A DNA stretch of 64,000 nt from Mobula birostris (taxonomy: Eukaryota), in contig NC_092375.1 in assembly GCF_030028105.1 (NCBI RefSeq), forward strand, positions 26,883,130-26,947,129, in the 5' to 3' direction. The position numbers and the translations under genes were made by a program. This document shows, one piece after another, positions 863 through 59,800 of this stretch. The notes under the pieces are model-generated. The model was not told the DNA's origin and ran no database searches. It worked only from the letters and a program-made list of their open reading frames with translations. Every line of letters begins with the position of its first letter. The first letter of the stretch is position 1.

Positions 863-1037
863 TTAAGAATGAAGCTATTTTCAAAAAAAAAACTGCTTCA
901 CAAAATCCAAGTTAATTGATAGGATTATGAAAGAAAACAGCCAACAGGAATGCATAGAGAAACTTTGAAAAAAATTCGTTGATACTTCAGTATGTTTCTC
1001 AGCACTATAGAGCATAGGAGTCAGGATTAACTGTGAA

Positions 1038-1218
1038 CACGAGGAAATCTGCAGATGCTGGAATTTCAAGCAACACACATAAAAGTTGCTGGGGAATGCA
1101 GCAGGCCAGGCAGCATCCCTAGGAAGAGGTACTGATGAAGGGTCTCGGCCCGAAATGTCGACTGTACCTCTTCCTAGAGATGCTGCCTGGCCTGCTGCGT
1201 TCACCAGCAACTTTTATG
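1038..1218. mobile_element. Fold-back Penelope-like (PLE) 3'-end insertion with hammerhead core
   Basis: Inverted arms. ctgatga-agggtctcggccc-gaaat-gtc-gact at 1132-1163. TSD aggattaactgtgaa at 1023-1037 and 1219-1233. Confidence 0.85.
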
Positions 1219-1299
1219 AGGATTAACTGTGAAACCTGTTTTATCTATTATCATACTTAAGCATGTAGGTATGCAGGTTAAATTGAAATCAAAACCAGA

Positions 1300-8331: not shown

Positions 8332-9464
8332 CTGAAGAACACATGACAGGAAAGAAGAAACGTCTCTTGAGCAACAGGCTCTGAAAGGTTTCCAAACAGG
8401 CTTTTAAAAACATTACTCTTCAATTTGGAAAAGTGTGAAGTGATACCCGAGGATAGGTTGAGCAAGCTAAGGTTTTGCTCTTTGGAGCAAGGAAGGATGA
8501 GAGGTGACTTTATAGAGGTGTGTAAAATAAAAGGCACAGGTAGAGTGGACAGACAGCTCTATTTCCTCCCCCCCTCCCGGCAAGAGTGGAAATAGCAAAT
8601 ACAAGGGTGCATATTTTTAAGGTGATTGGAGGAAAGTATTGGGGGGGGAGGGGAATGTCAGAATGGGGAAACAGAAGAATGTTGGGTGTGTAGAATGTGC
8701 TACCCAGGTAGAGGCAGATATATTCAGGACTCTGACTGAGACTCTTAGGCACATGAATGAAAGAGAAGTGGAGGGCTATGTGGGAAGGAAGGGTGGGTCA
8801 GATTGATCCTAGAGTAGGCTAAAAGGTCGGCACAACTCTGTGGGCTGAATAGCCTGTACTGTGTTGTACTGGTCTATGTTCTAAGTATACTGGAGGCTGG
8901 TAGGATAGGGGTGGAGTGCTTGAAGGAACTTATGCAACATTCTTTTCCTCTTCACACTCGTCAAGTGAACATCTGTGGCTCAGCCAGTTTTAAATGCCCT
9001 TCCCCAATCTTCCTGTTATTCTGTCACATTTTATGTAGACTAAACAAGCTCGTTTCATTTTGATCCCTATAAAAAGGACATTTCTGAGCCAGATCACCTT
9101 CACAAATTCCAGTCTTATTTAATAACTTAACTTTAAATCCCCTAGCTACCATTGTGGATTTGAAGTCACGTCTTTAAAACAACAATCCAGTCCTCTTGAT
9201 ATTAATCCAGAAACTTTATGCTACTGTGCCCCATCTACACAAGAGCTCTTTCTGAGCCGGTAACTGTTGGAGAACGATTGGTTGGCTGAGTTTTTATTAT
9301 TCTCCATTCTCAGATTGCTGGACAAAAGGGTTGATAGATGTTTGCCTTCTAAACCAGTTCACACAAGCCAATCCTGCTGACCCAGCTGAGGTCAACATTT
9401 CAGCTGGTTGAGCACTGGATAAACCCACGCAAGTGGTTTATTATTGCTAAAACAGAAGGGCAAA

Positions 9465-10036: not shown

Positions 10037-10337
10037 TTAATACAGAAACTCTGAGCACAAGACACAGCAATAAATGATTGTAAACATTGCAGGCAGGGTG
10101 CAATGTCTCAGGGATGGTTTGAAAGCACATTCACTATCCTGAGATTTAGTCTGTAAGTTTGCATATAGCTAAACAAGATCAAAATTAAACTTTCCTCAAG
10201 AGATTATTTTAATGACACATAGAAAAATTAATACCTCACAACGCCATCCCAACATGCCTCCTATCCACACAGCTCTGGTTTTAGTGGAAGTGTGAATGAG
10301 TCTGGTATTGAACCAGTGAACTTTTGTGCATCAGAGT

Positions 10338-10566
10338 CAACACACGCAAACAAAATGCTGGAGGAACTCAGCAGGCCAGGCAGGACCCATGAAAAAGAGT
10401 AAACAATTGACATTGCAGGCTGAGACCCTTTATCAGGACTTGATAAGGGGTTCAGCCCAAAACATCAACTGGTTATACTTTTTCCATAGATGCAGCCTGA
10501 CCTGCTGAGTTCCTCCAGCTTTGTGTGTGCTGCTTTGGATTTCCAGCATCTGCAGATTTTCTCACG
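10338..10566. mobile_element. Fold-back PLE 3'-end insertion (older subfamily)
   Basis: Inverted arms with decayed hammerhead motifs. Flanking repeats tttgtgcatcagagt and tttgtgcatcacagt. Confidence 0.8.
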
Positions 10567-11384
10567 TTTGTGCATCACAGTTAAAATGGCTTCCAAGTTT
10601 AACCTTGAGTGAGCTTTCCAGTTCTCAGGGTAACGAGGACAACTTCCTCAAAAAGATGCTGTGAAAATGTAGCAAATCTGTTGGGCCAAGAGGAGCTGAA
10701 GCATTTCCCCCACCAATGACGCTATATTCGCAACACCCCCACTCCCCCCAAACTCTCCCCCCCCACCCCAGCTGACATCAACTCTTCCCCTGGGGTCTGA
10801 CTGTCCCAGAAGATCGGAAACCACCCATTGCCCCAGCCGACCCCACCACCTGGACATATACAAGGCAAATTTGGGGACAAGTACTGAAGAATAAACCAAG
10901 CAGCACGTCCCACACATCACACACATCCAAAAGCGCTAATGCTTATGTTTTACTTCAACAAACAAGTTCCAGGAGAGAAAGAATAAATAAATAGAGGATT
11001 ATAAAGAAAAATAAATCTCACAAAGCAAATATATACAGTTAGTTCCAAGATCAATCTCTACCAGTTTTGTTCACTGCAGTGCCTTGTAAGTTTTTAAATA
11101 ACTCAAGGCCCCTTCAAATGGTGTTACTGCGACTGTTCTTGAAAATGGTTCAAATGGATGACATTACTTTTAGAGTTTATTTTAATTTGACAGAAGCACC
11201 ATAGGTTATGGAATAATGTAAACACAAGTAAGTCACTAAAAAAGCTTTAAGAAAGTATTTTTAATCCTAATAAACAGATTGCATTACAAATAGGACTAGA
11301 AGAAAATCAATGCCAAGCAAAACCAAAAATGGGCATTTCCATAAGAAATACGCACTATTTTATTTAGGGATATACCATGGTAAC

Positions 11385-20879: not shown

Positions 20880-20915
20880 TCTCCTGAAGAAGGGTTTCGG
20901 CCCGAAACGTCGACT
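20880..20915 (+). ncRNA. Minimal hammerhead ribozyme motif (PLE-derived)
   Basis: ctgaaga-agggtttcggccc-gaaac-gtc-gact. The core is intact but the 5' strand of helix I is imperfect. Confidence 0.55.
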
Positions 20916-21709
20916 GATTACGGATTTATTTATGCTCTCTCGCTCTCTCTCTCTCATCTTTATTAACACACACGAAATGCTTGAGGAACTCATCAAGTCA
21001 CTTCATCAGAAACTGCTGTAAACACAAAATACTCTGCAGATGCTGGGAGGTGTCCTGACGAAGGATGCTGCCTGACCTGCTGAGTTCCTCCAGCGTGTTG
21101 ATCAGAACCTGATGAATGGCTAGGGGCCAAAACATCGACTTTTTATGTCTGAGTTCCCACAGAAATGTGTGTCTCTCTTCCTCTACTTTCACAATGTTGC
21201 TTAAGCTCTTTGGTCATTTCCCCATTATTGATGTTAATTCTGCTATGAATGTGTAAGGTATGTTTGAAATTGTTGAAATGTTATTGTTGGATCATAATTA
21301 AAGACCCCACTGACCCCAGGCTTTCTCTCCTGTTCTTCTCCCATCAAGCAGAAGATACAACAGACCGAAAGCTAATAGCACAAGGTTTAAGGACATTCTA
21401 ACCCACTCTTTCAGAGTCTTGCACGGACCTCTTCTGTGATAAAATGGACCCTTGTCCTTATAATCGATCTTGTTAATATCTTCCACTTTATTGTTAAACT
21501 CCACTGGAGCTTCTACACTTTACTCTGCATTGTTATTGTTTTACCTTATTCTACTTCAATACACCTTGTGATTATTTGATCTGTATAAGGAGTATGCAAG
21601 ACAGGTTTTTCACTGTATTTGGTACATATGACACTAATAAACCAATGCCACCGCCCATTACCAACAAAAGAAAGTCTAACAATGATCAACACTCACAAAA
21701 TGCTGGAAC

Positions 21710-23587: not shown

Positions 23588-23775
23588 ACAAACAAGAGAA
23601 AATCTGCAGATGCTGGAAATCCACAGAGAATGCTGGAGGAACTCAGCAGGTCAGGTAGCATCTATAGAAAAGAGTGCAGTTGATGTTTCGGGCTGACACC
23701 CTTCATCAGGACTGCCCTTTATAGATGCTGCCTGTCCTGCTGAGTTCCTCCAGCATTTTGTGTGTGTTGTTTGTG
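23588..23775. mobile_element. Fold-back PLE 3'-end insertion with hammerhead motif on the minus strand (23678-23713)
   Basis: Inverted arms. TSD tcctgttgttcctc at 23574-23587 and 23776-23789. Confidence 0.85.
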
Positions 23776-30326: not shown

Positions 30327-31760
30327 GTAAGGTGGACAGGGAGGTGCTGAAGAGGTTTGTGCGAGATAGGCTTTGCCTCGAGGAGGCCGAGGTCAGGTTC
30401 GTATGGTTATCTTAAGCAATAATCTATCTTTAAATGTTTGTAATGTATTTCTTATGGTCGCTTTCCGAAGTCTGAGGAGAAGGATGCCGAGTGTGAGCTG
30501 TATGTGTGGTTGGTGGTTTGTCTGGGAAGCTGCAGTAACCCTGTGTCCATTCCATAACCGGATGCATCCATCAGTGTTACAACCATGGATGCAAATGTGT
30601 CTTTATTTCATTTGTCTTCGTTATTGGATGAAAAGGTGAATGACTGATGTTGGGCACCGCATTTCCATGTTACTGGCCCAAAGATAATAATGCCTCCTCA
30701 CTCATTAATTTTTAAGATTATGGGGATGGGGTGATGTTGTAGGAAAAGATCTGATTGGCAAGTTCATTTTTATGCTCATCAAGAAATTGTATAAAGACAA
30801 AAAAAAGTATTGTTTTTAAACAAATCAATTAGCACAATACTTAGCACAATTTCTGGAGATGTTTTACTTTTACGTAATCTTTTCTTGCTCTGGTCTGTAG
30901 ATTATGGTCAGTTTATCTTCTGCATCAACGAGAATGCCTGTAACTGTAATAAGGGAAGTTTAGTAATAAATAGCTAGTGTTTGACTTGCTGCTATCCTTG
31001 CAGCGTAAGTACTCCATTGCATTAATGAGGGAGTGTGTTTCAGTTAAGAGAAAATCTTTGGGATGAAAAATTTGGCTGTTTACTTGCATGTTTTTCATGT
31101 AGCATTGTGGTATCCATAAGGACAGTTCTCAGACACAGCTTTTGGAGGTGAAGCTCCAATTCATTGGCCTGTTCAATAAAGCATGAGGTGAAGGGCCTTG
31201 TGTACAGACACTCCTGTATGTAGTGTCATTTTATGGACACACTCAGTTTATGCATATAAACTATCTTGTGTATTTGTATTTATTGTGTTTTTTTTATTGT
31301 GTTCTTCATATGTTTTGGTTGCTGTATTGGATCTGGAGTAGTAATTATCTTGTTCTCTTTTACACCTGTGTACTGGAAATGACATTAAACAATCTTGAGT
31401 CTTGTATTCAGCATCTGCAAAGCAAAGGTGCACAACCTAACTATCCCAATATAGAACTTCCAGTGGTACTAAAGCTGTCTTCTGTACCATGTATGGAACA
31501 AATTATAGCTCTTTCATATGAGTGGAATGTGTTCAAGTCATTCTCAATACTAAGGGATGCTTCAGAAGAAATGGTATGAAAGCAGTACTGCTGAAGAGAG
31601 TGGCTAACGCAAAGAATATAGAAGACAGTTTCAAACATCTTGGCCTTAATGTGGGATTGTTTCTTAACTTTGTTCTTCAAGCAAGTTTGGTCCAGAATTT
31701 AGAATGTGACATCTTGAAAAGGGTGGAAGGGGATAGAACAAATATACTGTAGTTCCTCAA

Positions 31761-31975
31761 CACACATCAAATTTGCTGGTGAACACAGCAGGCCAGGCAG
31801 CATCTCTAGGAAGAAATACAGTCGGCATTTCCGGCCGAGACCCAGGTTTCGGGTCTCAGCCTGATACGTCGACTGTACCTCTTCCTAGAGATGCTGCCTG
31901 GCCTGCTGCGTTCACCAGCAACTTTGATGTGTGTTGCTTGAATTTCCAGCATCTGCAGAATTCCTTGTGTTTGCG
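31761..31975. mobile_element. Fold-back PLE 3'-end insertion
   Basis: Inverted arms meeting near 31845. 16-bp TSD tactgtagttcctcaa at 31745-31760 and 31976-31991. Confidence 0.88.
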
Positions 31976-34880: not shown

Positions 34881-37800
34881 AGCCAATGAGTTCCTCTAGC
34901 ATTTTGTGTGTGTTGCTTGGCATTCCCCAACATCTGTAGAGTCTCTAGGTCTGAGCTGTCTTCTAACAGGAAATGGGGGAATGAGGATGTCATTTGGCTC
35001 CTTGAGGTAACTGTAATGCAACTAGAGGAGATAAGCAACTTTGATAACTGTCCAAAAGGATTTGAAGATAGGCAAGTGATTTTCAAAATTGAGAGTCAAA
35101 GTAATCTGTATTGAAGGTAATAGGTGAATGGAGTTTGACATTTGCGGCAGACTTTTGAGCAAGTTTACAGAGGGTAGAATGAGGGAGGCATTGGGAGTGC
35201 ATTGGAATAGTAAACAGTAGAGGTAATAAATATAGACAAGCATTTTAGCAGCAGATGAGCTGACCAGCTACAAATGTGATGTAACAACTGTGGAACTAAG
35301 TGGTCTTTCATTGGCACCAAGTATATGGGCTGAAGTCTTATTGTATGAGTAAATATACCAAGGTTGTAAATAGTCCAAGTCGCTTCACACTGTCAGATAG
35401 AGACCGGGCTTAGGGGAAAAGACTTGTAGTTTTCCCTTTTCTAGGCTAATACTTGATATTGGGAGGATTGTCTTATAAGGAAAGTAGACGTCATATTCTG
35501 CAACTACTAGATTTTGGGGAGAGATGGGAATTGACTGAAACTAAGATCCTGTGATCAGAACGAGTGATCTGTGATCTGTCCTGCTGAGGGGTCTCGGCCC
35601 AAAACAACTGTACTTTTTTTCCCAGATGCTACCTGGCCTGCTGAGTTCCTCCAGCATTTTGTGTGTGTTGCTTGGATTTCCAGCATCTGCAGATTTTCTC
35701 TTGTTTGTGATCCTAACGAGTTGTCCATTTTGTTTCTTTAGGTAGTGAGTCTTTGGAATTTTACTTTCATTCCTTTATTTTAGGAAGAGAGTCTTTCTGT
35801 ATTTTAACATAAAGGTTGATAGTGTCTTGGTAAGCAAGGGGATATATGGGTACTTGCATTAAATGAAATTGTGGTATTCAACTTGCAATCAATCACCCAC
35901 GATCTCATCAAATAGTGCAGGAAACCCAAGGGTTCAGTTGCTCCTTTTTCGGATTTTTAGTTGAAGACCAATTTGCTGCGGTTAAGTTGTTTGTCTGACA
36001 TATCTTGATGGTGGGAGAGTGGAGAGGTGGTGGTTAAAAATCATCAGCAAGCAGTTGGAAAATGCAGCTGTTCCCTGGTGTTGCCATGGGGTGGCATATA
36101 ACTGAGAAATGGGAAGGGAATCAAGAGTGGTTTTCTTGAAGGGCAATTGGGTGTAAACATTGGAAGAGGTTAATTGCAGATATTTCTTTCACTACTGCCA
36201 GATAGATAATGGAGCCAGGTGACTACAGGACTGTTGACTCACAGTTTCTGTTCAGGAAACTTCAGTTTCCTATGCTTGGAGTCAGGATTTACGTGCTCAT
36301 AAATATATCTACATTAAAGGCACATTTTTAAAAATTGTTTTATTTGTCTTGCACATGATGTTGATTTTTCATTTTCCCAAACCCATTCCCCAATCTGTGT
36401 TGAGAATGTTAAAAGTAGTTATGGCTGAAGGAAAAGTGTTGGCCATTGTGAGCTGAACAAAGAAATTTCTTTTACACAGGGGTCAGAATGCAGATATCCA
36501 GCCTTCTGTTGTATTCGAGGCTGAGATAGCTTTTAGCCTCAAGGGACATCGAGATAAGGGATTATTCAAATACATTGATTTTTATGAACTGCTGTGGTAG
36601 GAAAAACATGCCAAATGGTCTGCGCTTAACAATAATGTATATGTTGTTGCTTCCCCGGAACCGTGTACAAACTTTGATTATGTACATGAATCTCCTTATT
36701 AGTACAAAGTTTACAGTTTTACCTCTTTCTGATCTGAATAAATGATTTTAAAAAAATGCTGTTGAATAAGAATCAATATAAATCTAAAAGTCGCAGGTCT
36801 GAACAGGAAGTAGAGATTTCTGCGCACACCCTGCCCTTTGTTGCTACTTGTTGTGATTATTCATTTTTTCCTTATGCTGAAGAGTAACTTGAACATCTTC
36901 CAGAACTGGTTCAATAGACTGCATTATAGATGGTCATTGGGCGTTCATGACAGGATACATGAGGAAAGATGTAATCGTGTTTTTAAAATAAGTGATTGGA
37001 ATTATTACCTAATTGTTAGCATTCTGATCTACCTCTTCCTTCTGCCCCCAATGAATTATTCTCAATATTTTTCAAAAAATTGTCCAGTACATTTTTTAAA
37101 CAATTTTTTCCCACACTTTTTCAATTTCTATGGTGCAAAACTCTTAGACACGCTAGATTTTTTAATATGGTTTCAGATGGTGTGGTCTGCACAAAGCCCT
37201 GATCTCAACATTGAGGTTTGGGATTACCTGGAGAGACAGTAGCAAGTGAGTTAGCCAGAAGTCTGCTGAAGAACTGTGGCAAGTTCTCCAAGATGCTTAG
37301 AACAACCTTCCAGCCAATTTTCTTATAAAACTGCATGACAGTGTACCTAAGACCGGAAGACATAGGAGCAGAATTAGGGCATTCAAACCCTCAAGTCTGC
37401 TCCGCTACTTCATCATGGCGGATTCATTTCCCCCTCAACCCATTCTCCTGCCTTCTTCACGAAACCTTTTATGCCCTGACTAATCAAGAGCTTATTAACC
37501 TCTGCCTTAAATACACCCAATGACTCAGCCTCCACAGCCACCTGTAGCAGCAAATTCCACAGAATCACCACCCTCCTGTTTAAAGAAATTCCTCCTCATC
37601 TCCATTCTAAATGAATGTTCCTCTTTTCTGAGGCTGTGCCCTCTGGTCCTAGACTCTCCACCATAGGACACATCCTCTCCACATCCACTCTTATCTAGGC
37701 CTATCAGCATTTGATAGGTTTCAATGAAATACCCCCCCCATCATTCTTCTAAATTCTAGCAAGTAAAGGCTGAGAGCCATCAGTTGCTCCTCGTACGATA

Positions 37801-39503: not shown

Positions 39504-40090
39504 TATTCCAAATGAGGCTTCACCAGTACATTATAAAGCCTCAGCATTATTTCGCAAACAACAGGAATTCTGCAGATGCTGGAAATTCAAGCAACACACA
39601 TCAAAGTTGCTGGTGAACGCAGCAGGCCAAGCAGCATCCGTAGGAAGAGGTGCAGTCGGCGTTTTAGGCCGAGACCCTTCGTCAGGACTAACTGAAGGAA
39701 GAGTGAGTAAGAGATTTGAGAGGGGGAGGGGGAGATCCAAAATGATAGGAGAAGACAGGAGGGGGAGGGATAGAGCCAAGAGCTGGACAGGTGATAGGCA
39801 AAAGGGGATACGAGAGGATCATGGGACAGGAGGTCCGGGAAGAAAGACAAGGGGGGGGGACCCAGAGGATGGGCAAGAGGTATATTCAGAGGGAGAAAAA
39901 GGAGAGTGAGAGAAAGAATGTGTGCATAAAAATAAGTAACAGATGGGGTACGAGGGGGAAGTGGGGCCTAGCGGAAGTTAGAGAAGTCGATGTTCATGCC
40001 ATCAGGTTGGAGGCTACCCAGACAGAATATAAGGTGTTGTTCCTCCAACCTGGTGTGGCTTCATCTTTACAGTAGAGGAGGCCGTGGATA

Positions 40091-40400
40091 GACATGTCAG
40101 AATGGGAATGGGATGTGGAATTAAAATGTGTGGCCACTGGGAGATCCTGCTTTCTCTGGCGGACAGAGGACATGTCAGAATGGGAATGGGATCTGGAATT
40201 AAAATGTGTGGCCACTGGGAGATCCTGCTTTCTCTGGTGGACAGAGACATGTCAGAATGGGAATGGGATCTGGAATTAAAATGTGTGGCCACTGGGAGAT
40301 CCTGCTTTCTCTGGTGGACAGAGACATGTCAGAATGGGAATGGGATGTGGAATTAAAATGTGTGGCCACTGGGAGATCCTGCTTTCTCTGGCGGACAGAG
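40091..40400. repeat. Four tandem copies of a 77-78 bp unit at the inversion junction
   Basis: The unit gacatgtcagaatgggaatgggat(g/c)tggaattaaaatgtgtggccactgggagatcctgctttctctgg(c/t)ggacaga starts at ~40091, 40169, 40246 and 40323. Confidence 0.92.
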
Positions 40401-40880
40401 AAAGCAGGATCTCCCAGTGCCCACACATTTTAATTCCACATCCCATTCCCATTCTGACATGTCTATCCACGGCCTCCTCTACTGTAAAGATGAAGCCACA
40501 CTCAGGTTGGAGGAACAACACCTTATATTCCGTCTGGGTAGCCTCCAACCTGATGGCATGAACATCGACTTCTCTAACTTACGCTAAGGCCCCACCTTCC
40601 CCTCGTACCCCATCTGTTACTTATTTTTATGCACACATTCTTTCTCTCACTCTCCTTTTTCTCCCTCTGAATATACCTCTTGCCCAACCTCTGAGTCCCC
40701 CCCCCCCGCCCCCTTGTCTTTCTTCCCGGACCTCTTGTCCCATGATCCTCTCGTATCCCCTTTCGCCTATCACCTGTCCAGCTCTTGGCTCTATCGCTTC
40801 CCCTCCTGTCTTCTCCTATCATTTTGGATCTCCCCCTCCCCCTCCAACTTTCAAATCCCTTACTCACTCTTCCTTCAGTT

Positions 40881-40916
40881 AGTCCTGACGAAGGGTCTCG
40901 GCCTGAAACGTCGACT
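40881..40916 (+). ncRNA. Minimal type I hammerhead ribozyme (intact core)
   Basis: AGTC-CTGACGA-agggtctcggcct-GAAAC-GTC-GACT: helix I agtc/gact, conserved core, GUC triplet, palindromic ACGU in place of helix III. Confidence 0.8.
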
Positions 40917-42289
40917 GCACCTCTTCCTACGGATGCTGCTTGGCCTGCTGCGTTCACCAGCAACTTTGATGTGTGTTGCTCAGCATTATTTCCTTGCTTT
41001 TATATTCTAGTCCTTTCTAAATTAATGCTAACATTACATTTGCGTTCTTCACCACTAGTTTAACCTGCAAATTAACTTTTAGGGAATCCTGCACAAGAAC
41101 TCCCAAGTAACTTTGCATCTCAAAGTTTCGAAATTTTTTTCCCCCATTTAGAAAATAGTCTGTGCTTTTATTTCTTCTGCCAAAGTGCCTGACCATACGC
41201 TTCCCAAAACTGTATTCCATTTGCCACTTCTTTGCCCATTTTCCTATTTGTCCAACTCCTCCTGCAGCTTTCCTGCTTTCTCAACGCTACCTGTCCCTCC
41301 ACCTATCTTTGTATTGTCCACAAACTTGTCCACAAAACCATCAATGCTGTCATTGAAATCATTAATGTGCAATGTAAAAAGAAGCACTTCCAACACCAAC
41401 TCCTGCAGAACACCGCAATCAGAAAAGTTACTTTTATTCCTGCTCTTTGTCTCCTGCCCATCAGCCAATGCTCTATCCATGCTAGTATCTTTCCTGTACT
41501 ACCATGGGACACTTGTCTTGTTAAGCAGCCTCGTGTGTGGCACCTTGTCAAAGGCCTTCTGAAAGTCCAAATACAAAACTTCCACCAATCCTCCGTTGTC
41601 AATTCTGCTTGTTATTTCTTCAAAGAATTCCAGCAGATTTGTCAGGCAGGATTTTCCCTTGAGGAAACCATACTGTCTACAGCCCATTTTATCATATGCC
41701 TCCAAGTATCTCGAGACCTCATCCTTAGTAATTGACTCCAACATCTTCCCAACTACTGAGGTCAGACTAACTGGCCAATAATTTCCTTTCTTCTGCCTCC
41801 TTCCCTTCTTGAAGAGTGGAGTGACATTTGCAATTTTCCAGTCCTGAGGAATCATTCTAGAATCTAGTGATTCTTGAAAGATCATTAATTATGCCTCCTT
41901 AAGAGAATTGATGCAGTTTTAAAGGCAAATTGAAATCATATTAAAGATTGATATTTAGGTTTTTTTTTTACTGCTCTTTATAGTACATCTTTAATTTAGA
42001 AACTCCATTATTTTTGAAAGCATCTTAGCTTTACAGATTTTTTTTCATATGCCTAAGACTGTTGCACAGTACTGTATCAAGAGCAGAATACTTACAGTAT
42101 GTAGGAGCTAGGCAAATGATTTTCAAATTTAATTTGATTTGCTCTGAAAGCAATCATTTGATTAAATATATCTAATTCAGTATTTTAAATCATTTTATAT
42201 TAAAAAGAAAGGAAAACATTTGTCTTCCATCTGAACATTTAGGACGTTACTAAATAACAACTGCTGTTCTGGATCTTTTCAATGATTTC

Positions 42290-43918
42290 AAATTCCCTGG
42301 CCCCAGTTCCTATACAGTACACCTCCATCCCCCCCCACCAGGAAGGCCTCAAAGCTCTCTGTTTCTTTCTGGACACCAGATGGCACTAGTACCCCTCCAC
42401 CATTACTCTCCTCCGTCTAACAAAATGTCCTCACTCTTAATAATTTCTCATTTGGCTCCTCCCACTTCCTTCAGTCAAAAGGTCTAGCCAAGGGCACTCG
42501 CACGGGTCCCAGCTATGCCTGCCTTTTTGTCTGCTACACAGAACAGTCTATGTTGCAAGCCTACACTGGCATCCATCCTCCACTTTTCCTACACTACATC
42601 GACGTCTGCATTGGTGCAGTCTCCTGCACCCAAGCAGAGCTCATCAACTTCTTCAACTGCCCCCAACTTCCACCCTGTCCTCATTCACCTGGTCCATTTC
42701 CAACACCTCCCTCCCCTTTCTTGATCTCACTGCCTCTATCTCTGGAGACAGCTTGTCTACTGATGTCTATTATAAACCCACATACTCTCACAGCTACCCT
42801 GACTATACCTCGTCCCACCCTGTTACTTGTAAAATTGCCATCTCTATTCAGTCTCCACCACATTTGCTCTCAGGATGAGGCTTTTCATTCGAGAACAGAG
42901 GAGATGTCCTCCTTTTTCAAAGATGGGAGCTTCTCTTCCTCCACCATCAACGCTGCCCTCAATCACTACGCTTCCATTTCACACACATCTGCCCTTACCC
43001 CATCCTCCCGCCACCCTGCCAGGGATAGGGTTCCTCTTGTCCTCGCCTACCACCCCACTAGCCTCCGCGTCCAGAACATAATTCTCTGGAGCTTCCGCCA
43101 TCTCCAACAGGATCCCACCACCAAGCACATCTTTCCCACCTCCTCCCCACTTTCTGCAGGCATCACTCCGTACGGGACTCCCTTGTTCATTTGTCCCTCC
43201 CCACTCCTGGCACTTATCCTTGCAAGCAGAAGAAGTGCTGCACCTGCCCCTACACCTCTTCCCGTACTACCATTCAGGGCTCCAAACACCTGTGAGTCAA
43301 TTGGGGTCATCCATTGTGGCTTCCTGTATATTAGGGAGACCAAATATAGGTTGGGAGACCACTTCGTCGAGCAGCTACTCTCTGTCTGCCAGAAGAAACA
43401 GGATCTCCCAGTGGCCACCCATTTTAATTCCACTTTCCATTCCAATATATCGAGAAGAAGCCACACTCAGGTTGGAGAAAAACTCATTGTATTCTCTCTG
43501 GGCAGCCACCAACCTGTTTGCATGAACATTGATTTCTTGAACTTCTGGTAATGTCCCCACCCCCTCACCATTCCCCATCCCTTCTTCCCTCTCACCTTAT
43601 CTCCTTGTCTCCCTATTGCCTCCTTCTGGTGCTCCTCCCTACCCCCTTTGTTTTTCTTCTGTCTTCTATTAGTTTTCTCCCTTCTCCAGTCCTGTATCTC
43701 TTTCACCAATCAACTTCCTAGCTCTTTACTTCACCCCTCCCCCTCCTGGGTTCACCTATCACCTTGTGTTTCTCTCTCCCTTTTCCCCACCTTTTAAATC
43801 TACTCATCTATTTTTCTCCAGTCCTGCCGAAGGGTCTTGGCCTGAAACGTCAACTGTACTCTTTTCCATAGATGCTACCTGGCCTGCTGAGTTCCTCTAG
43901 TAATTTGCGTGTGTTGTT
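42290..43918 (+). mobile_element. Degenerate Neptune-type Penelope-like element (RT plus GIY-YIG endonuclease, 3' UTR)
   Basis: KGLAKGTRTGPSYACLF and FLHYIDVCIG (RT), a PCKQKKCCTCPY Cys linker, LYIRETKYRLGDHF (GIY-YIG), then the same 3' end as the short copies. Confidence 0.88.
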
Positions 43919-44058
43919 ATAGCCAGCTCAGTTGTATTTGATTGGAAATGCTAGAGCTTTAGCATTAGGTCATGCACGCTGTTTGCATTTGTTTATCTGT
44001 TAGGCCATTGGAAAGATTATTTTATAAAAGTACAATGAGTTGCATGCTAGCTCAAGAA

Positions 44059-44928
44059 CAGTGGTCCCTAACCACCGGGCCACGGATCGGTACCAGGCCG
44101 CAAAGCATGTGCTACCGGGCCGCGAGGAAACGATATGAGTCAGCTGCACCTTTCCTCATTCCCTGTCATGCACTGTTGAACTTGAACATTAGGTTGCCAA
44201 CTGTCCCGTATTTGCCAGGACATCCTGTATATTGAGCTAAATTGGTTTGTCCCATATGGGACCGCCCTTGTCCCGTATTTCCCCCGCTAAGGTAGAGCAT
44301 TCCTATGAAACCTTTCATGCCGAAATGGTGTAAAGTGAAGAAGCAATTACCATTAATTTATACGGGAAAAATTTTTGAGCATTCCCAGACCCAAAAAATA
44401 ACCTACCAAATCATACCAAATAACACATAAAACCTAAAATAACTCTAACATATAGTAAAAGCAGGAATGTTATGATAAATACACAGCCTATATAAAGTTG
44501 AAATAATGTATGTACAGCATAGTCGGGAAGATTAAGCCAAAACCGATTTGTGGAAAAAAAACCCGGCACGTACGCGCATGCGCACACAGATGCCCGCGCA
44601 AGGCTTCATGGTAATGGTAGTCTTTCTCGGGGTAAACACAAGTGTCCTGTCAACACACACAAAAAATGCTGGTGAACGCAGCAGGCCAGGCAGCATCTAT
44701 AGGAAGAGTCGATGTTTCGGGCCGGGATCCTTCATCAGGATTTGACTGCTACTTTGTCCCTTATTTGGGAGTGAGAAAGTTGGCAACCCTAACTAAAAGA
44801 CATGTTGAGTTGAGTTTAACCCTACTTGAACACCCCTCCGCGCCCCCCCCCCCCCCCAGTCAGCCGGTCCGCAAGGATATTGTCAATATTAAACCGGTCC
44901 GTGGTGCAAAAAAGGTTGGGGACCCCTG
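44059..44928. mobile_element. hAT (Charlie-like) MITE with a composite interior
   Basis: TIRs cagtggtccctaacc / ggttggggacccctg. 8-bp flanks ctcaagaa / ctgtagaa match at 6 of 8 positions. Inner TIR pair taggttgccaac (~44190) / gttggcaacccta (~44779-44791). Confidence 0.8.
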
Positions 44929-44949: not shown

Positions 44950-45090
44950 TGAAGAGTCGTGACGAAGGGTCTCAGCCTGAAACGTCGACTGCACCTCTTC
45001 CTAGAGATGCTGCCTGGCCTGCTGCGTTCACCAGCAACTTTTATGTGTGTTGCTTGAATTTCTAGCATCTGCAGAGTTCCTGTTGTTTGC
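44950..45090 (+). mobile_element. PLE 3' end with a mutated hammerhead core
   Basis: agtc-gtgacga-agggtctcagcct-gaaac-gtc-gact followed by the full tail. Confidence 0.8.
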
Positions 45091-47346: not shown

Positions 47347-47852
47347 CTGTATATATTTTGAGAAAATGTTTTTGGTAGTGCCTGAAATTTTCCATACCAT
47401 TCACCATTTACATCTCGTACTTGCTTTCCTAGGAATTTTGTATTTACTGTAAACATCTGTCATGTTTGCAGTGGCTATACAACTAAAATACTTGATAATT
47501 GAGGTCCACTAATACACTTCAACTGACTACAATATGTATATTGCTGATTTCTTGGGAATAGAATGTTGCACTTTCCTTTATCTCAAGTATCCAGAAATAG
47601 AACATTGAACTGAACACGTCCATTGGTCCACAATGTGCTGACGTTTTAACCCACTCCAAGATCAATCTAACCCTTCCCTCCCTCATAGCCCTCCATTTTT
47701 CTTTCATTATTGTGCCTAAGAGTCTTTGAGATGCTTTCCTCCAATCACCTTAAAAGTATATGCTCTAATTTTAGCCATTGTCACTCTGTGAAAGAGGTGC
47801 TGGCTGTCCATTCAATCTACATCTCTTACCATCTTTGCACCTCTTACCAAGT

Positions 47853-48041
47853 AACAGGAATTCTGCAGATGCTGGAAATTCAAGCAACACTCATCAAAGT
47901 TGCCGGTGAACGCAGCAGGCCAGGCAGCATCTCTAGGAAGAGGTACAGTCGACGTTTCAGGCCGGCCTGAAACGTCGACCGTACCTCTTCCTAGAGATGC
48001 TGCCTGGCCTGCTGCGTTCACCGGCAACTTTGATGTGTGTT
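47853..48041. mobile_element. Loop-less palindromic PLE 3'-end insertion
   Basis: Centre gtcgacgtttcaggcc|ggcctgaaacgtcgac. TSD cctcttaccaagt / cctcttatcaagt. Confidence 0.88.
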
Positions 48042-48609
48042 CCTCTTATCAAGTGTCCACTTGTCTGCCTTTGTTCCAGAGAGAAAAGCCATGACGCTCT
48101 CAACCTTTGCTCATATGCTTTGTTTTCTAATCCAGAGAACATTCTGGTAAATCTCCTCTGCTCTCTCTAAAGCTTCCACACTATTCCTACAATGGTGACC
48201 AGAACTGACCACAGTACTCCAAGGTGATCTAATCAGAGACCGTAAGACACAGGAACAGAGTTGGGCCATTCGGCCCATCGACTGTTCTGGCATTCCATCT
48301 TGGCTGATTTTTTTTTTTATTTTATTGAGGTACAGCATGGAATAGACCCTTCCAGCCCTTTCAGACACACTGCCAAACAATCCACCAATTTAACCATAGC
48401 CAAAGCACGGGACAGTTTACAAAGACCAACTAACCTACTAACCAGTGCATCTTTGGACTGTGGGAAAACCTAGAGGAAACCATGTGGTCATGGGGTGAAC
48501 ATAGTCCTTACAGGCAGTGACGGGAACCTCTCAACCCCCATTCTCATGCCTTCTCCCCATAACCGTTAATGCCCTTACTAATCTAGAACCCACTTCTGAC
48601 TTTAAAAAT

Positions 48610-50520: not shown

Positions 50521-50893
50521 AATAAGAAATAAAAATGGTGGTAGGCCATTTGGCACCTTGTGTCTGCTCCACCTTGTACAGTTGCCAAACCTGTTTTCTG
50601 AACTATTTCCCTGCTTGGATCTGTTTGTACAACATGGGCAATACTATCTGAATCATGTAAGGATAATGTAATGGGTGAACAATGACACATATTGTTCATA
50701 AAAGAAACTGTTCTGCATAGCTCACATACACTATCATTGAGTTGTTGTGTTCACTTTAAGAGATGGTATCTGATGTAATGATGTCAGTATAAGGCAAACA
50801 ACAGGAATTCTGCAGATGCTGGAAATTCAAGCAACACACATCAAAGTTGCTGGTGAACGCAGCAGGCCAGGCAGCATCTCTAGGAAGAGGTGC

Positions 50894-50929
50894 AGTCGAC
50901 GTTTCAGGCCGAGACCCTTCGTCAGGACT
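50894..50929 (-). ncRNA. Minimal type I hammerhead ribozyme (intact core)
   Basis: The reverse complement is identical to 40881-40916. Confidence 0.8.
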
Positions 50930-51294
50930 AACTGAAGGAAGAGTGAGTAAGGGATTTGAAAGTTGGAGGGGGAGATCCAAAATGATAGGAGAAGACAGGA
51001 GGGGGAGGGATGGAGCCAAGAGCTGGACAGGTGATAGGCAAAAGGGATAAGAGAGGATCATGGGACAGGAGGTCCGGGAAGAAAGACGTGGGGGGGGGGG
51101 GTCCCAGAGGATGGGCAAGGGGTATATTCAGAGGGACAGAGGGAGAAAAAGGAGAGTGAGAGAAAGAATGTGTGTATAAAAATAAGTAACAGATGGGGTT
51201 CGAGGGGGAGGTGGGGCATTATTCTTCTCCTATCATTTTGGATCTCCCCCTCCCCCTCCAACTTTCAAATCCCTTACTCACTCTTCCTTCAGTT

Positions 51295-51330
51295 AGTCCT
51301 GATGAAGGGTCTCGGCCTGAAACGTCGTCT
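51295..51330 (+). ncRNA. Minimal type I hammerhead ribozyme (intact core, one helix I mismatch)
   Basis: AGTC-CTGATGA-agggtctcggcct-GAAAC-GTC-GTCT. Confidence 0.7.
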
Positions 51331-51429
51331 GCACCTCTTCCTAGAGATGCTGCCTGGCCTGCTGCGTTCACCAGCAACTTTTATGTGTGTTGCCAGTATA
51401 AGGCAATTGTCTTTTAGTTTGTTCGTAAT

Positions 51430-56869: not shown

Positions 56870-59800
56870 CACCAGAACTGGAGGGGGGCTAATATCTTAG
56901 TGGGGACGTTTGCTCGTGCTGCACAGGGGTTGGGGGGCTAATATCTTAGTGGGAAGGTTTGCCCGTGCTGCACAGGGGTTGGTGGTTTAAACTGATTGCG
57001 GGGAGATGGGAGCCAGAACAAGCGAAACAGATAGTGGAGTGATTGTGGAGAAAGATGTCATTAAGCCTACCCACTAGTTCAGGAATTAAAGACCGAGCAT
57101 CGTGTGACTAATGTTTTGAGCTGCACATATTGCAGTGCAAGTATTGAAGGAAAGGCAGATGAGCTTAGGGCATGGATCAGCACATGAAATTATAATGTTA
57201 TAGCCATTAGTGAATCATGGTTGCAGGAGGGGCAGGACTGGCAGCTTAATGTTTTGGGGTTCCATTGTTTTGGAAGTGGTAGAACGGGAGGGATGAAAGG
57301 CATTACTAGTCAGGAAAAATGTCATGGTGGTGATCAGTTAGGACAGACTGGAGAACTGATCTGATGAGGCTTTATGGGTAGAACTGAGGAAAGAGAAAGG
57401 TATGACCACATTAATGGGTTTATGTTATAGACCACCCAACAGTCTGTGCGATTTAAGAGAAGCAAATTTGCAGAAAAATCACAGACTGATGCAAGAAACA
57501 AAAGGTTGCAATAGTAGGTGATTTTAACTTTCCACATATTGACTGGGATTCCCATGCTGTAAAAGGGCTGAATGGAAAAGAATTTGTCAAATGTGTTCAG
57601 GAAAGTTTCCTTCATCGGTACATAGAAGTCCTAGCTACAGAGAGTGTGATACTAGATAAGGGAATAAGACAGGGCAGGTGACAAGTTTGTGTAGGGAAGC
57701 ACTTTGCATCTAGTGATCACAATGCCATTAGTTTCAAGGTAGTTATGGAAAAGGATAGGTCTGGTCCTCTGGTTGAGATTCTAACTTGGAGAAAGGACAA
57801 TTTTCATGGTATCAGAAAGGTTCTGGCAGGTGTGGATTGGGATAGCTTGTTTTCTGGCAAATGTGTACTTCGTAAATGAGAAGTCTTCAAAAGTGAATTT
57901 GTGAGTCGTTTTTATGTTCCTGTCAGAATAAAAGGCAAGGGTAACAGATTTGGGGAACCTTTATTTTCAAGAGATATTCAGGCCTTGGTTAAGAAAAAGG
58001 AGGTGCTTGGCAGGTATAGGCAGGCAGGAACAAATGAGGTACTTGAGTATAAGAAATGCAAGATAACATTTAAGAAGGAAATCAGGAGGGCTAAAAGAAG
58101 GCATGAGATAGGTCTAGCAGACAGTGTGAAGGAGAATTCTAAGGACTTCTACAGGTAGATTAAGAGCATAGGACCCAATTGGTCCACAGGAGGAGCAGAG
58201 TGGTAATCTATGTGTGGAATTGAAAGAGATGGAGGAGATTTTAAATGGAGTTTTTGTATCTGTATTTACTGGGGGAAGATGGACACAGAATCTATGGATG
58301 TGAGGCAATGCAGCAGCAAGGTAATGGACCCTAAACAGATTACAGAGGAAGAGATGTTTGCTGTCTTGAGGCAAATTATGGTGAATAAAACCCCAGCTCC
58401 TGGCAGGGTATTCCCTTGGGCCCTATGGGAGGCAAGTGCAGAAATTACAGGGGCCCTAGCAGAGATATTTAAAACATCCTTAACCACAAGTCAGGTGCAG
58501 GAGGATTATAGGATGTTGTTCCATTGCTTAAGAAAGACTCTTAAGAATAAGCCAGAAATTTGTAGGCTGGTGAGCCTGACATCAGTAGTGGAAAGTCAGT
58601 GGAAGATATTCTCAGGGACCGGATATGTAAGTATTTGGATAAACAGGGATTGATTGGGAATCATTATCATGGCTTCATCCCAAGATACCAGGAAAGTTGA
58701 TGAAGGCAAGGCAGTGGATGTTGTCTACATGGACCTTAGCAAGGCATTTGACCAGGTCCCACATGGGGGCTTGGTTAAGGAGGTTCAGCCACATGGCATT
58801 CAAGATGAGGTAGCAAATTGAATTAAACGTTGCTTTGCAGGAGAGGCCAGAGAGTGGCAGTAGATGTTTGCCTCTGACTGGAGGCCTGTGACCAGTGGTG
58901 TGCCGCAGGGATCGGTGCTGGGCCCATTGTTGTTTGTCATCTATGTCAATGATTTGGATGATAATGTGGTAAACTAGATCAGTAAATTTGTGGATGACAC
59001 CAGGAATGGAGGCTTTGCGAGAATGACTAGCAAAGCTTACAACGGGACCTGGACCACCTAGATAAGTGGGCTGAAAATGGCAGATGGAATTTAATGCAGA
59101 CCAGTGTGAGGTGTTGCACTTTGGGAGGACCAATTGGGATAGTTGTTGCACAGTGAGCTGTAGGGTATTGAAGAGTGCAGTAGAAAAGAGGAATCTGTGA
59201 ATACAGATCCATAATTCCTTGGAAGTGGCATCACAAGTTAATAGGGCACATTGCCTTCATAAATCTGTGTATTGAGTACAGGTACTGAGTCGCTCTGGTG
59301 GTCCTCTTTCTTCCCCCCCCCCCCCCACTTTCTTCAGTGGCCTTCTGTCTCTTTCACCAATCAACTTCCCAGCTCTTACTTCATCCTTGCCCCCCGCCAG
59401 CTTTCATTTATCACCTTGTGTTTCCCTCTCCCCTCCCTCACCTTTTAAATCTACTCCTCTGCTTTATTCTCCAGCCCTGCCGAAGAGTTTCAGTCCGAAA
59501 TGTCGGCTGTATTTTTTTCCCCTAGATGCTGCCTAGCCTGCTGGGTTCCTCCAACATTTTTGTGTGTGTTAGTGATACAGGAGTTGGGATGTTATGTTAA
59601 AATTGTATAAGGTGTTGGTCAGGCCTAATTTGGATAATTGTGTGCACTTTTGGTTACCTGCCTATAGGAAAGATATAAATAAGATTGAAAGAGTGCAGAG
59701 AAAATTTAGTAAGATATTGCCAGGACTTGAGGACCTGAGTTTTTGGGAAAAGTAGGGGAAGGTTGAATAGGTTAGGATTTTATTCCCTAGAATATAGAAG

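What the first reader, a model, noticed from the sequence alone, without database searches (positions are those of the whole stretch)
40881..40916. A dispersed family of minimal hammerhead ribozymes carried on Penelope-like element 3' ends
Seen: the 36-nt motif AGTC-CTGANGA-AGGGTCTCGGCC(C/T)-GAAAC-GTC-GACT recurs at ~1132(+), 10410(-), 10440(+), 20884(+), 21109(+), 23678(-), 35581(+), 39654(-), 40881(+), 43820(+), 44708(-), 44955(+), 50894(-), 51295(+) and 59473(+), in varying states of decay. It has the hammerhead core (CUGANGA, GAAA, GUC), helix I (agtc/gact), a short helix II, and only the palindrome ACGU where helix III should be. Known: Penelope-like elements carry such minimal type I hammerheads, which are thought to need dimerisation. 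Inference: about one copy per 4-5 kb here implies a very large genome-wide ribozyme-bearing repeat family that standard annotation would label only as a SINE or unknown repeat.
Basis: partly seen in the sequence, partly recalled or inferred. Interest (0 to 1): 0.85.

Follow-up and report, generated by a model that had tools for sequence, protein, structure and literature searches.

The report
Hammerhead motifs on Penelope retrotransposon tails
The repeated 36-letter motif is the minimal hammerhead ribozyme motif that Penelope-like retrotransposons are already known to carry near their 3' ends, here in a very abundant family of a probably ray-like fish genome, and whether it still cuts RNA could not be tested.

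Summary
A covariance model finds 17 full-length and 4 partial copies in 64 kb, and shuffled sequence gives none.

The motif lies about 290 nt downstream of the stop codon of a Penelope-like element (PLE) ORF. That ORF ends in a GIY-YIG endonuclease and is 94% identical to a Mobula hypostoma protein. The motif is followed by a 65-100 nt terminal module.

Insertions carry the published PLE signature. Seven are head-to-head inverted pairs of 5'-truncated copies, each flanked by a 7-14 bp target-site duplication. Each pair has the roughly 35-nt extra "tail" on one arm only.

The motif meets the published features of PLE minimal hammerheads (Cervera & De la Pena 2014). One exception is a G.U instead of G-C at 10.1-11.1 in the youngest subfamily.

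Only 2 of 17 copies pass a strict descriptor. Rfam hammerhead models do not detect the motif. Covariation within the window is not significant, and cleavage in vivo could not be tested.

Verdict: a real, very abundant member of a known kind. The scan's first stage noted it many times elsewhere in this genome. One possibly new detail is that 5 of 7 inverted-pair junctions fall inside the motif.

The parts
40881..40916 (+). Minimal type I hammerhead motif, structurally intact copy. The predicted cleavage site is between 40912 and 40913.
   Evidence: 62.3 bits. Helices I and II are in the minimum-free-energy fold.
40384..40980 (+). Plus arm of an inverted-pair PLE insertion. It is 5'-truncated inside the endonuclease-coding part and has the short 3' end.
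40396..40587 (+). End of the PLE ORF (C-terminal part of the GIY-YIG endonuclease) with its stop codon at 40585-40587.
   Evidence: translation. (94% identity to the P0001 C-terminus).
40588..40880 (+). C/T-rich 3' UTR between the stop codon and the motif. It is poorly conserved between subfamilies.
   Evidence: 57-62% identity between subfamilies A and B. (loose ends at 40580 and 40881).
40917..40980 (+). Terminal module downstream of the motif, ending at the short 3' end. It is as conserved as the motif.
39555..40290 (-). Minus arm of the same insertion, with the long 3' end (extra tail of about 35 nt, 39555-39589). Its motif at 39654-39689 carries two core substitutions.
   Evidence: The arms are 97.1% identical.
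39540..39553 (+). Left copy of the 14-bp target-site duplication of this insertion. The right copy is at 40979-40992.
   Evidence: Read by eye from the flanks printed.
40090..40401 (.). Tandem array of 77 bp x 4 made of endonuclease-coding sequence, next to the centre of the inverted pair (about 40393).
50795..51409 (.). Youngest inverted pair. The minus arm is 50795-51242 (long end, intact motif 50894-50929). The plus arm is 51223-51409 (short end, motif 51295-51330 with one helix I mismatch).
   Evidence: The arms are 98.2% identical.
42550..43961 (+). Older 5'-truncated copy of a diverged subfamily (B): an ORF of 333 codons (RT C-terminus plus degenerate GIY-YIG), a UTR, and the motif at 43820-43855 with A6 changed to C.
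1036..1233 (.). Inverted pair with its junction in the motif. The plus-arm motif at 1128-1163 keeps the catalytic boxes but has lost the helix I 5' strand.
10334..10570 (.). Old inverted pair (arms 77.7% identical) with its junction at the 5' border of the motif. Both motifs are decayed.
23589..23773 (.). Inverted pair. The minus arm carries the motif at 23678-23713. The plus arm starts at or within 4 nt of the predicted cleavage site.
31758..31973 (.). Inverted pair with both arms truncated at the 5' base of helix II.
   Evidence: partial hits.
47849..48048 (.). Inverted pair with both arms truncated inside the 3' strand of helix II. It forms a near-perfect palindrome centred at about 47963.
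   Evidence: partial hits.
20880..20915 (+). Isolated motif with intact catalytic boxes, cut off right after helix I.
21105..21140 (+). Diverged motif copy with a different helix II sequence and G12 changed to A.
35577..35707 (+). Single copy that begins at the motif (decayed core) and has the long 3' end.
44955..45089 (+). Single copy of the young subfamily that begins at the first base of the motif (C3 changed to G). It has the long 3' end.
44645..44791 (-). Separate older copy with its motif at 44707-44742. It is not a true partner of 44955, since no shared target duplication was seen.
59324..59584 (+). Subfamily B copy. Its motif at 59473-59508 has A6 changed to C and a two-sided change in helix I (U-A to C-G).

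Best explanation
The motif is the minimal (helix III-less) type I hammerhead of an endonuclease-bearing Penelope-like retrotransposon. The Cys-rich linker ahead of its GIY-YIG domain suggests the Neptune type.

Shown here:
- The motif lies in the 3' non-coding region, about 290 nt after the ORF stop. It is 64-68 nt upstream of a short 3' end and about 100 nt upstream of a long 3' end.
- Motif plus downstream module form one conserved block, while the UTR upstream diverges.
- Most insertions are dead on arrival. They are 5'-truncated and are often two copies joined head to head within one target-site duplication. One arm has the short end and the other has the long end.

Inferred from published work on other PLEs:
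- The RT-endonuclease cuts both target strands and primes reverse transcription on both, starting at internal sites of the RNA. This gives the inverted pairs and the one-sided tail.
- In transcripts of active master copies the motif folds helices I and II. Two motifs pair through ACGU to build helix III, and each RNA is cut after C17 (here 40912/40913).
- The two motifs would come either from two terminal repeats of a tandem transcript or from two RNAs held by a dimeric element protein. The protein probably assists cleavage.
- Cleavage of the 3'-terminal copy would separate the template from its priming site. The insertions seen here must therefore have come from uncut RNA.
For: - Motif anatomy and excess over chance.
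- PLE carrier.
- Inverted 5'-truncated copies and a 30-40 bp tail at one end only are described for PLEs (PMC8557442).
- Cleavage and extension of both strands, internal initiation and a protein-assisted hammerhead are described for an Anolis PLE (PMC11167929).
- In the window, 7 of 8 inverted pairs share a 7-14 bp target duplication, and 7 of those 7 have one long and one short end (chance 0.008).
- Conservation between subfamilies A and B: motif 33/36 and 27/36 identical, against UTR 57-62%, even though the motif holds several CpGs.
- Genome-wide contigs break at 40580 (just before the stop codon at 40585-40587), at 40881 (first base of the motif) and at 40980 (short end). Depth is highest in the motif bin. 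The only variant of 10% or more listed inside the motif is 40904 T>C, which keeps the 10.1-11.1 pair.
- The family was active over a long span, since arm-to-arm identity ranges from 78% to 98%.
Against: - No hammerhead family of Rfam matches, even at E up to 10 on 81 nt.
- Covariation among the 17 window copies is not significant: 79.0% of cells are paired against 78.0% in shuffles, and 72 of 500 shuffles reach the covariation score.
- The motif is no better conserved than the downstream module: column identity 0.855 against 0.815 and 0.863. Conservation alone therefore does not single out ribozyme function.
- The motif-plus-module RNA folds no better than shuffles (z = -0.31). The monomer fold pairs core bases GACG with CGUC.
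- The youngest subfamily has G.U at 10.1-11.1 instead of the usual G-C.
- No raw RNA reads were available, so there is no evidence of cleavage. A break at 40913 is not among the 18 loose-end rows shown (1423 rows not shown).
- Published minimal PLE hammerheads cleave poorly in vitro. In the Anolis element the ribozyme was not needed for insertion in vitro, and no RNA-seq reads ended at its site.
- No full-length copy is in the window, so a 5' terminal repeat with a second motif was not seen.
Confidence: 0.85

Rival explanations
1. The block is conserved for a job other than RNA cleavage, and its hammerhead shape is inherited but no longer used catalytically. Possible jobs are binding of the element's RT-endonuclease, pairing of two template RNAs through the ACGU/GUCGAC palindromes, or joining of the two cDNAs made on the two target strands.
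For: - The motif and the downstream module are equally conserved.
- 5 of 7 single-event inverted pairs have their junction inside the 36-nt motif. P is 0.003 or less under three simple nulls, chosen after the fact.
- Published work reports low in vitro activity of minimal PLE hammerheads, dispensability for insertion in vitro and successful PLE clades without hammerheads.
- G.U replaces G-C at 10.1-11.1 in the youngest subfamily.
Against: - All 13 core positions are kept in the youngest copies despite several CpGs in 36 nt.
- The only common variant inside the motif keeps a base pair.
- A catalytic-core mutant and rescue series showed genuine ribozyme cleavage in the Anolis element.
- Seven pairs is a small sample, and the junction positions inside the motif differ from pair to pair.
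Confidence: 0.25
2. The short units (motif plus terminal module, about 100-140 nt) are an independent non-autonomous family that merely borrows the PLE machinery. They would be a SINE or monomers of a non-LTR retrozyme, not truncated PLE copies.
For: - Several arms begin at or within a few nt of the first base of the motif: 35577, 44955, both arms at 10434/10443, and 1128.
- 520 DNA contigs break exactly at 40881.
- Rare contigs join motif to motif head to tail: 'goes back 35' in 3 contigs of X1 and 1 of X9.
- A 2026 preprint argues that animal retrozymes derive from PLE terminal repeats.
Against: - Longer copies of the same subfamily run continuously from ORF through UTR into the motif.
- The letters beyond the 40881 break are C/T-rich with low agreement, like the UTRs of other subfamilies.
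- No tandem array of the motif is in the window.
- There is no tRNA-like head and no Rfam tRNA, 5S or SRP match.
- Short arms share target duplications with partner arms, as PLE insertions do.
Confidence: 0.1
3. The hammerhead resemblance is a chance feature of a repeat.
For: Rfam models do not match, and covariation is not significant.
Against: - A descriptor that needs all boxes, helix II, a paired 15.2-16.2 and helix I finds 0 to 0.01 hits per shuffled window.
- The motif also shows features not imposed by the boxes, namely the extra nucleotide after A9 and the palindrome.
- It sits where PLE hammerheads are known to sit.
Confidence: 0.02

Closest known systems
Minimal hammerheads (min-HHR) of metazoan Penelope-like elements (Cervera & De la Pena 2014, PMC4209133; text parts 1-2 of 4 read)
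   Same: - CUGANGA, GAAA and UH boxes.
- An unpaired nucleotide between A9 and 10.1.
- No helix III, with a palindromic 15.2-16.2 that implies a dimeric active form.
- A short helix I (4 bp plus one G.U).
- Location in the terminal non-coding region of a PLE.
- Mostly solitary or opposite-strand pairs on truncated copies, and many diverged families per genome.
   Different: - Helix II here is only 4 bp, against 7-8 bp in the Schistosoma families and 6 bp in Drosophila virilis.
- The youngest subfamily has G.U at 10.1-11.1.
- Local density is about one motif per 3-4 kb of this window, which is far above the 4,000-9,000 per genome reported for coelacanth and Xenopus if the window is typical.
- The paper's supplementary figures listing vertebrate families were not available to me.
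Hammerhead of the Poseidon element of Anolis carolinensis, PAc (Frangieh et al. 2024, PMC11167929; passages and section 3 part 1 read)
   Same: [quoted passage not shown]
- A hammerhead lacking helix III, with reverse transcription starting downstream of it at internal sites.
- A one-sided tail signature.
- Both target strands used, which fits the inverted pairs seen here.
   Different: - In PAc the ORF start overlaps the hammerhead. Here the reading frame opened by the ATG after the motif stops after 16 codons in the terminal copies, and no full-length copy was available to see the ORF start.
- PAc belongs to the Penelope/Poseidon clade, whereas this element has the Cys-rich linker described for Neptune/Nematis. 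That linker was seen by eye in P0001, and no tree was built.
Non-LTR retrozymes of animals (Cervera & De la Pena 2020, PMC7229834, search listing only; Li et al. 2026 preprint, abstract and part of results read)
   Same: Type I hammerheads that need a second copy, a relationship to PLE terminal repeats, and presence in a cartilaginous fish according to the preprint.
   Different: Retrozymes are head-to-tail tandem arrays that give circular RNAs. In this window the motif is never in tandem, and the copies are PLE truncation products.
Rfam hammerhead families (types I, II, III, HH9, HH10; names recalled)
   Same: The same catalytic core and type I topology.
   Different: No match at gathering score or at E up to 10. 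The likely reason is that these models expect a helix III.

Membership tests
Minimal hammerhead of PLEs (Cervera & De la Pena 2014) | Catalytic boxes CUGANGA ... GAAA ... UH in type I order | tested here: met
   The boxes are present in 40881-40916. 7 of 17 window copies keep all boxes (read by eye). 2 of 17 pass the full descriptor, against 0 in 200 shuffles.
Minimal hammerhead of PLEs (Cervera & De la Pena 2014) | [quoted passage not shown] | tested here: met
   There is an A at 40892, and that alignment column is 90% or more A.
Minimal hammerhead of PLEs (Cervera & De la Pena 2014) | Conserved G10.1-C11.1 pair | tested here: inconclusive
   The flagged copy has G.U (T at 40904). Among 16 distinct rows there are 8 G-C, 7 G.U and 1 unpaired. 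In genome-wide contigs 19-28% of depth has C at this place.
Minimal hammerhead of PLEs (Cervera & De la Pena 2014) | No helix III loop, with 15.2-16.2 palindromic so that two copies can build helix III | tested here: met
   ACGT occupies 40908-40911. 7 of 17 copies have CG at 15.2/16.2, 5 have TG and 5 have CA, the latter two being the CpG decay products.
Minimal hammerhead of PLEs (Cervera & De la Pena 2014) | Located in the terminal repeats (pLTRs) flanking a PLE ORF | tested here: inconclusive
   The position 3' of a PLE ORF is shown. No full-length copy is in the window, so an upstream repeat with a second motif was not seen.
Minimal hammerhead of PLEs (Cervera & De la Pena 2014) | [quoted passage not shown] | tested here: inconclusive
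   There are 3 two-sided changes in 9 pairs. The covariation score is 0.206, reached by 72 of 500 shuffles. The sample is small and consists mostly of dead copies.
Hammerhead ribozyme (any type) | Site-specific self-cleavage after position 17 | not testable with these tools
   No raw RNA reads were on offer. Contigs cannot show RNA ends.
Rfam hammerhead covariance models | Score at or above the gathering threshold | tested here: not met
   No hammerhead match at gathering on the whole window, at E up to 10 on 8 kb or at E up to 10 on 81 nt.
Endonuclease-bearing Penelope-like element | One ORF with a reverse transcriptase followed by a C-terminal GIY-YIG endonuclease | tested here: met
   The window ORF 42550-43551 finds 15 relatives at E 7e-72 to 5e-17. 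P0006 has RVT_1 at 22.7 bits (below cutoff) and then GIY-YIG at 23.2 bits (cutoff 22.6). Window 40396-40584 is 94% identical to the P0001 C-terminus. The window ORFs themselves gave no Pfam hit at E 0.01 or less.
Endonuclease-bearing Penelope-like element | Insertions with an adjacent inverted 5'-truncated copy and a 30-40 bp tail at one end only | tested here: met
   Eight inverted pairs were found. Seven share a 7-14 bp target duplication, and 7 of those 7 have one long and one short 3' end differing by about 35 nt.
Non-LTR retrozyme | Head-to-tail tandem repeats each carrying a hammerhead | tested here: not met
   No tandem array contains the motif. The only same-strand neighbours within 1 kb, 20880 and 21105, belong to different subfamilies. 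Rare head-to-tail joints do occur in contigs.
SINE | Head derived from a tRNA, 5S or 7SL gene with an internal pol III promoter | tested here: not met
   ARAGORN finds 0 genes and Rfam finds 0 matches at gathering. Short units begin directly with the motif.

The most novel reading that the evidence does not exclude
In this lineage the minimal hammerhead may matter less as a cutter than as the self-complementary spot where an insertion is closed. Two template RNAs, or the two cDNAs primed on the two target strands, would meet and be joined at the motif's palindromes (helix II, ACGU/GUCGAC, helix I).

This would explain why 5 of 7 single-event inverted pairs have their junction inside these 36 nt. 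It would also offer a reason why PLEs retain hammerhead-shaped sequence even where cleavage is weak or dispensable.

A second, quantitative reading is that this genome may hold the largest hammerhead-motif family of any vertebrate, on the order of 10^5 or more copies.
Probability: 0.15. Interest if true: 0.6.

Novelty: new member of a known kind. Interest (0 to 1): 0.25.

Why it matters
The finding adds a cartilaginous-fish lineage, with very high copy density, to the known association of minimal hammerheads with Penelope-like elements.

The window is a clean natural record of the PLE insertion signature that was only recently explained biochemically: two-strand priming, two alternative start sites and a one-sided tail.

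For annotation, these copies should be labelled as PLE termini and not as SINEs or unknown repeats.

The open question in the field is what the hammerhead does for the element. This finding does not answer it. The abundance of dated inverted pairs would, however, allow a genome-wide test of whether junctions prefer the motif.

Tried and rejected
- Rfam: no hammerhead match. The only hits near the site were spurious microRNA matches to the long hairpin at the centre of the inverted pair.
- Covariation on the 17 window copies: not significant.
- Thermodynamic signal: helices I and II appear in the minimum-energy fold, but the module is no more stable than shuffles. The predicted homodimer does not adopt the hammerhead dimer fold. 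I give these predictions no weight either way.
- Conservation of the motif against the downstream module: no difference. Two of 28 rows were dropped because their motif part is the read-through of the partner arm.
- Sequencing runs: 24 rows, none on record as RNA.
- Read laying: the one raw-read DNA run (X21, another organism) laid 0 reads, so there was no read-level census of ends. The 'RNA?' runs X9 and X15 are contigs of uncertain kind whose profile resembles the DNA run, so they say nothing on expression.
- One X9 contig ends exactly at 40912. I reject it as evidence of cleavage, because contigs end at variable places and 40912/40913 is a decaying CpG.
- Cross-species DNA of relatives' 3' regions could not be fetched, so covariation between species was not tested.
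- Pair 44743/44954 was first counted as an inverted pair and then rejected. It has no shared target duplication, a 160-nt unrelated spacer and different subfamilies.
- Copies 20884 and 44738 were first taken to begin at the motif. Their upstream letters resemble UTR remnants, or align to the UTR, so I do not count them.
- Literature searches for PLEs in cartilaginous fishes returned nothing specific to hammerheads in rays or sharks. The Li et al. preprint sampled one unnamed chondrichthyan. I did not ask for supplementary files. The supplementary figures and tables of PMC4209133 and of the preprint may list cartilaginous-fish families.
- The organism is not established. 'Ray-like' rests only on the best protein relatives.
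Full report
**1. The observation**

In hammerhead numbering (recalled, and as used in PMC4209133):
- 40881-40884 is the 5' strand of helix I.
- 40885-40891 is C3-A9 (CUGACGA).
- 40892 is an extra unpaired A.
- 40893-40904 is helix II: G.U, G-C, G-C and U.G around a 4-nt loop.
- 40905-40907 is G12-A14.
- 40908-40911 (ACGU) occupies positions 15.1, 15.2, 16.2 and 16.1 with no loop.
- 40912 is C17.
- 40913-40916 is the 3' strand of helix I, and 40917 can add a G.U pair with 40880.

The 28-nt pattern with up to 3 mismatches occurs 10 times, against 0 in 100 shuffles. With only the boxes fixed it occurs 9 times, against 0.02 expected. A covariance model built from 17 aligned copies finds those 17 plus 4 partial copies and nothing more. 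An iterated profile of the motif plus the downstream module finds 30 arms.

**2. What carries the motif**

Self-comparison shows that the motif is part of a longer repeat. Upstream of it lies a C/T-rich stretch of about 290 nt. Upstream of that is the end of an ORF that is 94% identical over 63 residues to the C-terminus of P0001, an uncharacterized protein of Mobula hypostoma.

An older, diverged copy at 42550-43961 keeps a 333-codon ORF. It finds 15 relatives in Mobula hypostoma, Hypanus sabinus, Rhincodon typus and two unnamed eukaryote sets (E 7e-72 to 5e-17).
- The window ORFs gave no Pfam hit.
- The relatives hit GIY-YIG at their C-terminal part (19.6-23.2 bits; only P0006 passes the 22.6 cutoff).
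- P0006 also hits RVT_1 ahead of GIY-YIG (22.7 bits, below cutoff).

Reverse transcriptase followed by a C-terminal GIY-YIG endonuclease is the architecture of canonical Penelope-like elements (PMC8557442, passages). A Cys-x5-Cys-x2-Cys stretch ahead of the endonuclease in P0001 (seen by eye) fits the linker that the same paper ascribes to Neptune-type elements. I built no tree, so the clade is an inference.

**3. Anatomy of the insertions**

Most copies are short, and many are head-to-head inverted pairs. The flagged site belongs to one such pair. The minus arm is 39555-40290 and the plus arm is 40384-40980. They are 97.1% identical and meet near 40393 inside endonuclease-coding sequence, next to a 77-bp x 4 tandem array.

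Reading the flanks printed by eye, 7 of 8 pairs are bounded by a direct duplication of 7-14 bp of target. The flagged pair has 14 bp, at 39540-39553 and 40979-40992. Each pair is therefore one insertion event.

In all 7, one arm stops at a short 3' end and the other runs about 35 nt further to a long 3' end. The chance of 7 mixed pairs out of 7 with independent ends is 0.008.

This matches published descriptions of PLEs. Those describe an inverted 5'-truncated copy next to the element and a 30-40 bp tail at one end only (PMC8557442). It also matches the biochemistry of an Anolis element, whose protein cuts and extends both target strands and starts reverse transcription at internal sites of the RNA (PMC11167929).

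Arm-to-arm identity ranges from 77.7% to 98.2%. The lineage has therefore inserted here over a long time.

**4. Is it a hammerhead of the known PLE kind?**

Cervera & De la Pena 2014 (text parts 1-2 read) define minimal hammerheads of PLEs by these features:
- the catalytic boxes;
- a nucleotide between 9 and 10.1;
- a conserved G10.1-C11.1 pair;
- palindromic 15.2-16.2 with little or no helix III;
- a short helix I;
- location in the terminal repeats.

They also note solitary motifs on truncated copies and pairs on opposite strands 100-700 bp apart.

The window copies meet these features, with two reservations.
- The youngest subfamily has G.U at 10.1-11.1. Counts are 8 G-C and 7 G.U among 16 distinct rows. 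In genome-wide contigs the only variant of 10% or more listed inside the motif is 40904 T>C, at 19-28% of depth, which restores G-C (15 rows of that table were not shown).
- No full-length copy is in the window, so an upstream repeat with a second motif was not seen.

A strict descriptor of my own required the boxes, a helix II of at least 3 bp, a paired 15.2-16.2, U16.1, H17 and helix I. It is passed by 2 copies (40885+, 50898-), by a third if helix I may be 2 bp, and by essentially none of 200 shuffled windows.

**5. Evidence on selection**

Between the young subfamily A and the diverged subfamily B, identity is as follows:

| Segment | Identity A vs B |
|---|---|
| Motif | 33/36 and 27/36 |
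| UTR | 57-62% |
| Downstream module | 63-69% |
| ORF end | 82% |

In contigs of a DNA run of the likely source organism, 161,638 pieces lie on 40470-41100. Summed depth is highest in the bin 40888-40909. The best-supported breaks are at 40580 (just before the stop codon at 40585-40587), at 40881 (the first base of the motif, 520 contigs) and at 40980 (the short end). The letters beyond the 40881 break are C/T-rich with low agreement, as expected from other subfamilies' UTRs.

Conservation across subfamilies thus starts exactly at helix I. This holds even though the motif contains several CpGs, which visibly decay in old copies (TG or CA at 15.2/16.2 in 10 of 17 copies).

Several results point the other way.
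- Over all window copies the motif is no better conserved than the module behind it (0.855 against 0.815 and 0.863).
- Covariation in helices I and II is not significant.
- Folding energy is unremarkable.
- Rfam models do not see the motif.

The data show a constrained block. They do not show by themselves that the constraint is catalysis.

**6. How it most likely works**

Identity as a PLE minimal hammerhead: about 0.85-0.9. Catalytic use in vivo: about 0.4-0.5.

The model, taken from the literature and fitted to this anatomy, is as follows.
- In master-copy transcripts, two motifs pair through ACGU to form helix III, and each RNA is cut after C17. Cleavage is probably helped by the element's protein, which was needed for cleavage in the Anolis element.
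- The starts of reverse transcription lie 64-100 nt downstream of the cut. A cut 3'-terminal motif would therefore lose its priming site.
- The insertions in the window all contain the motif joined to the module, or begin downstream of it. They therefore derive from uncut RNA. This agrees with the Anolis result that unprocessed RNA is the main substrate.

I could not test cleavage. No raw RNA reads were offered, the raw DNA run laid nothing, and contigs cannot show RNA ends.

**7. A detail that may be new**

5 of the 7 single-event pairs have their junction inside the 36-nt motif:
- at the 5' border (10434/10443);
- at the 5' base of helix II (31845/31850);
- inside the 3' strand of helix II (47962/47965);
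- near C3 and a few nt after the cut site (1128/1155);
- at helix I and the cut site (23685/23714).

Under three simple nulls chosen after seeing the data, P is 1.5e-5 to 3e-3.

Two single copies (35577, 44955) also begin at the first base of the motif. The self-complementary motif may stall the polymerase. It may instead let the two cDNAs, or two template RNAs, pair. The sample is small, and I did not search the literature specifically for this point.

**8. Comparison and novelty**

The association of minimal hammerheads with PLEs is established for fishes, coelacanth, amphibians, reptiles and many invertebrates. A 2026 preprint finds hammerhead-bearing retrozymes related to PLE terminal repeats in one cartilaginous fish. 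My searches found no paper on PLE hammerheads in rays or sharks, and supplements were not seen.

The first stage of this scan flagged the same thing on many other pieces of this genome. Eight notes were listed, and 400 notes hold both words. None was marked as checked.

I file this as a new member of a known kind. It is notable for its density and for the clean insertion signature, not for a new mechanism.

Noticed in passing
window 40090-40401: A tandem array of 77 bp x 4 (97% matches), made of endonuclease-coding sequence, sits next to the centre of the inverted pair. It may be a product of repeated template switching at the junction.
   Followed up: partly
window 40341-40445: The centre of the inverted pair forms a long near-perfect hairpin. 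It draws sub-threshold matches to several unrelated microRNA families in Rfam (best 32.6 bits, all below gathering). These are artefacts of the palindrome.
   Followed up: yes
window 25291-26376 (+): An uninterrupted 361-codon ORF has a DnaJ domain and the DNAJC28 conserved domain (E 5e-23). It is probably the single-exon host gene DNAJC28.
   Followed up: no
window 21050-21100 (+): This copy joins the 5' half of the motif directly to the middle of the terminal module. That is an internal deletion removing helix II, the cut site and about 20 nt beyond.
   Followed up: no
window 40881-40917 as laid: A few contigs join motif to motif head to tail ('goes back 35': 3 contigs in DNA run X1 and 1 in X9). 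Rare tandem motif dimers therefore exist somewhere in the genome.
   Followed up: no
window 46082-46807 (+), 6034-6591 (+), 63224-63997 (-): Remnants of other mobile elements are present: a hAT dimerisation domain (E 3e-4), a zf-RVT (E 7e-5), and an RVT_1 reverse transcriptase ORF (E 1e-22) that is not the Penelope-like one.
   Followed up: no
window 39256-39499 vs 44278-44516: Another dispersed repeat (87% identity, opposite strands) lies next to two of the Penelope insertions. A further repeat boundary near 41062 shows up as loose ends in all three contig runs.
   Followed up: no
runs X1-X18: At least three differently labelled organisms (A, B, C) hold half or more of the sampled words of 39400-40100. 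The young subfamily is therefore shared by related species or labels.
   Followed up: no
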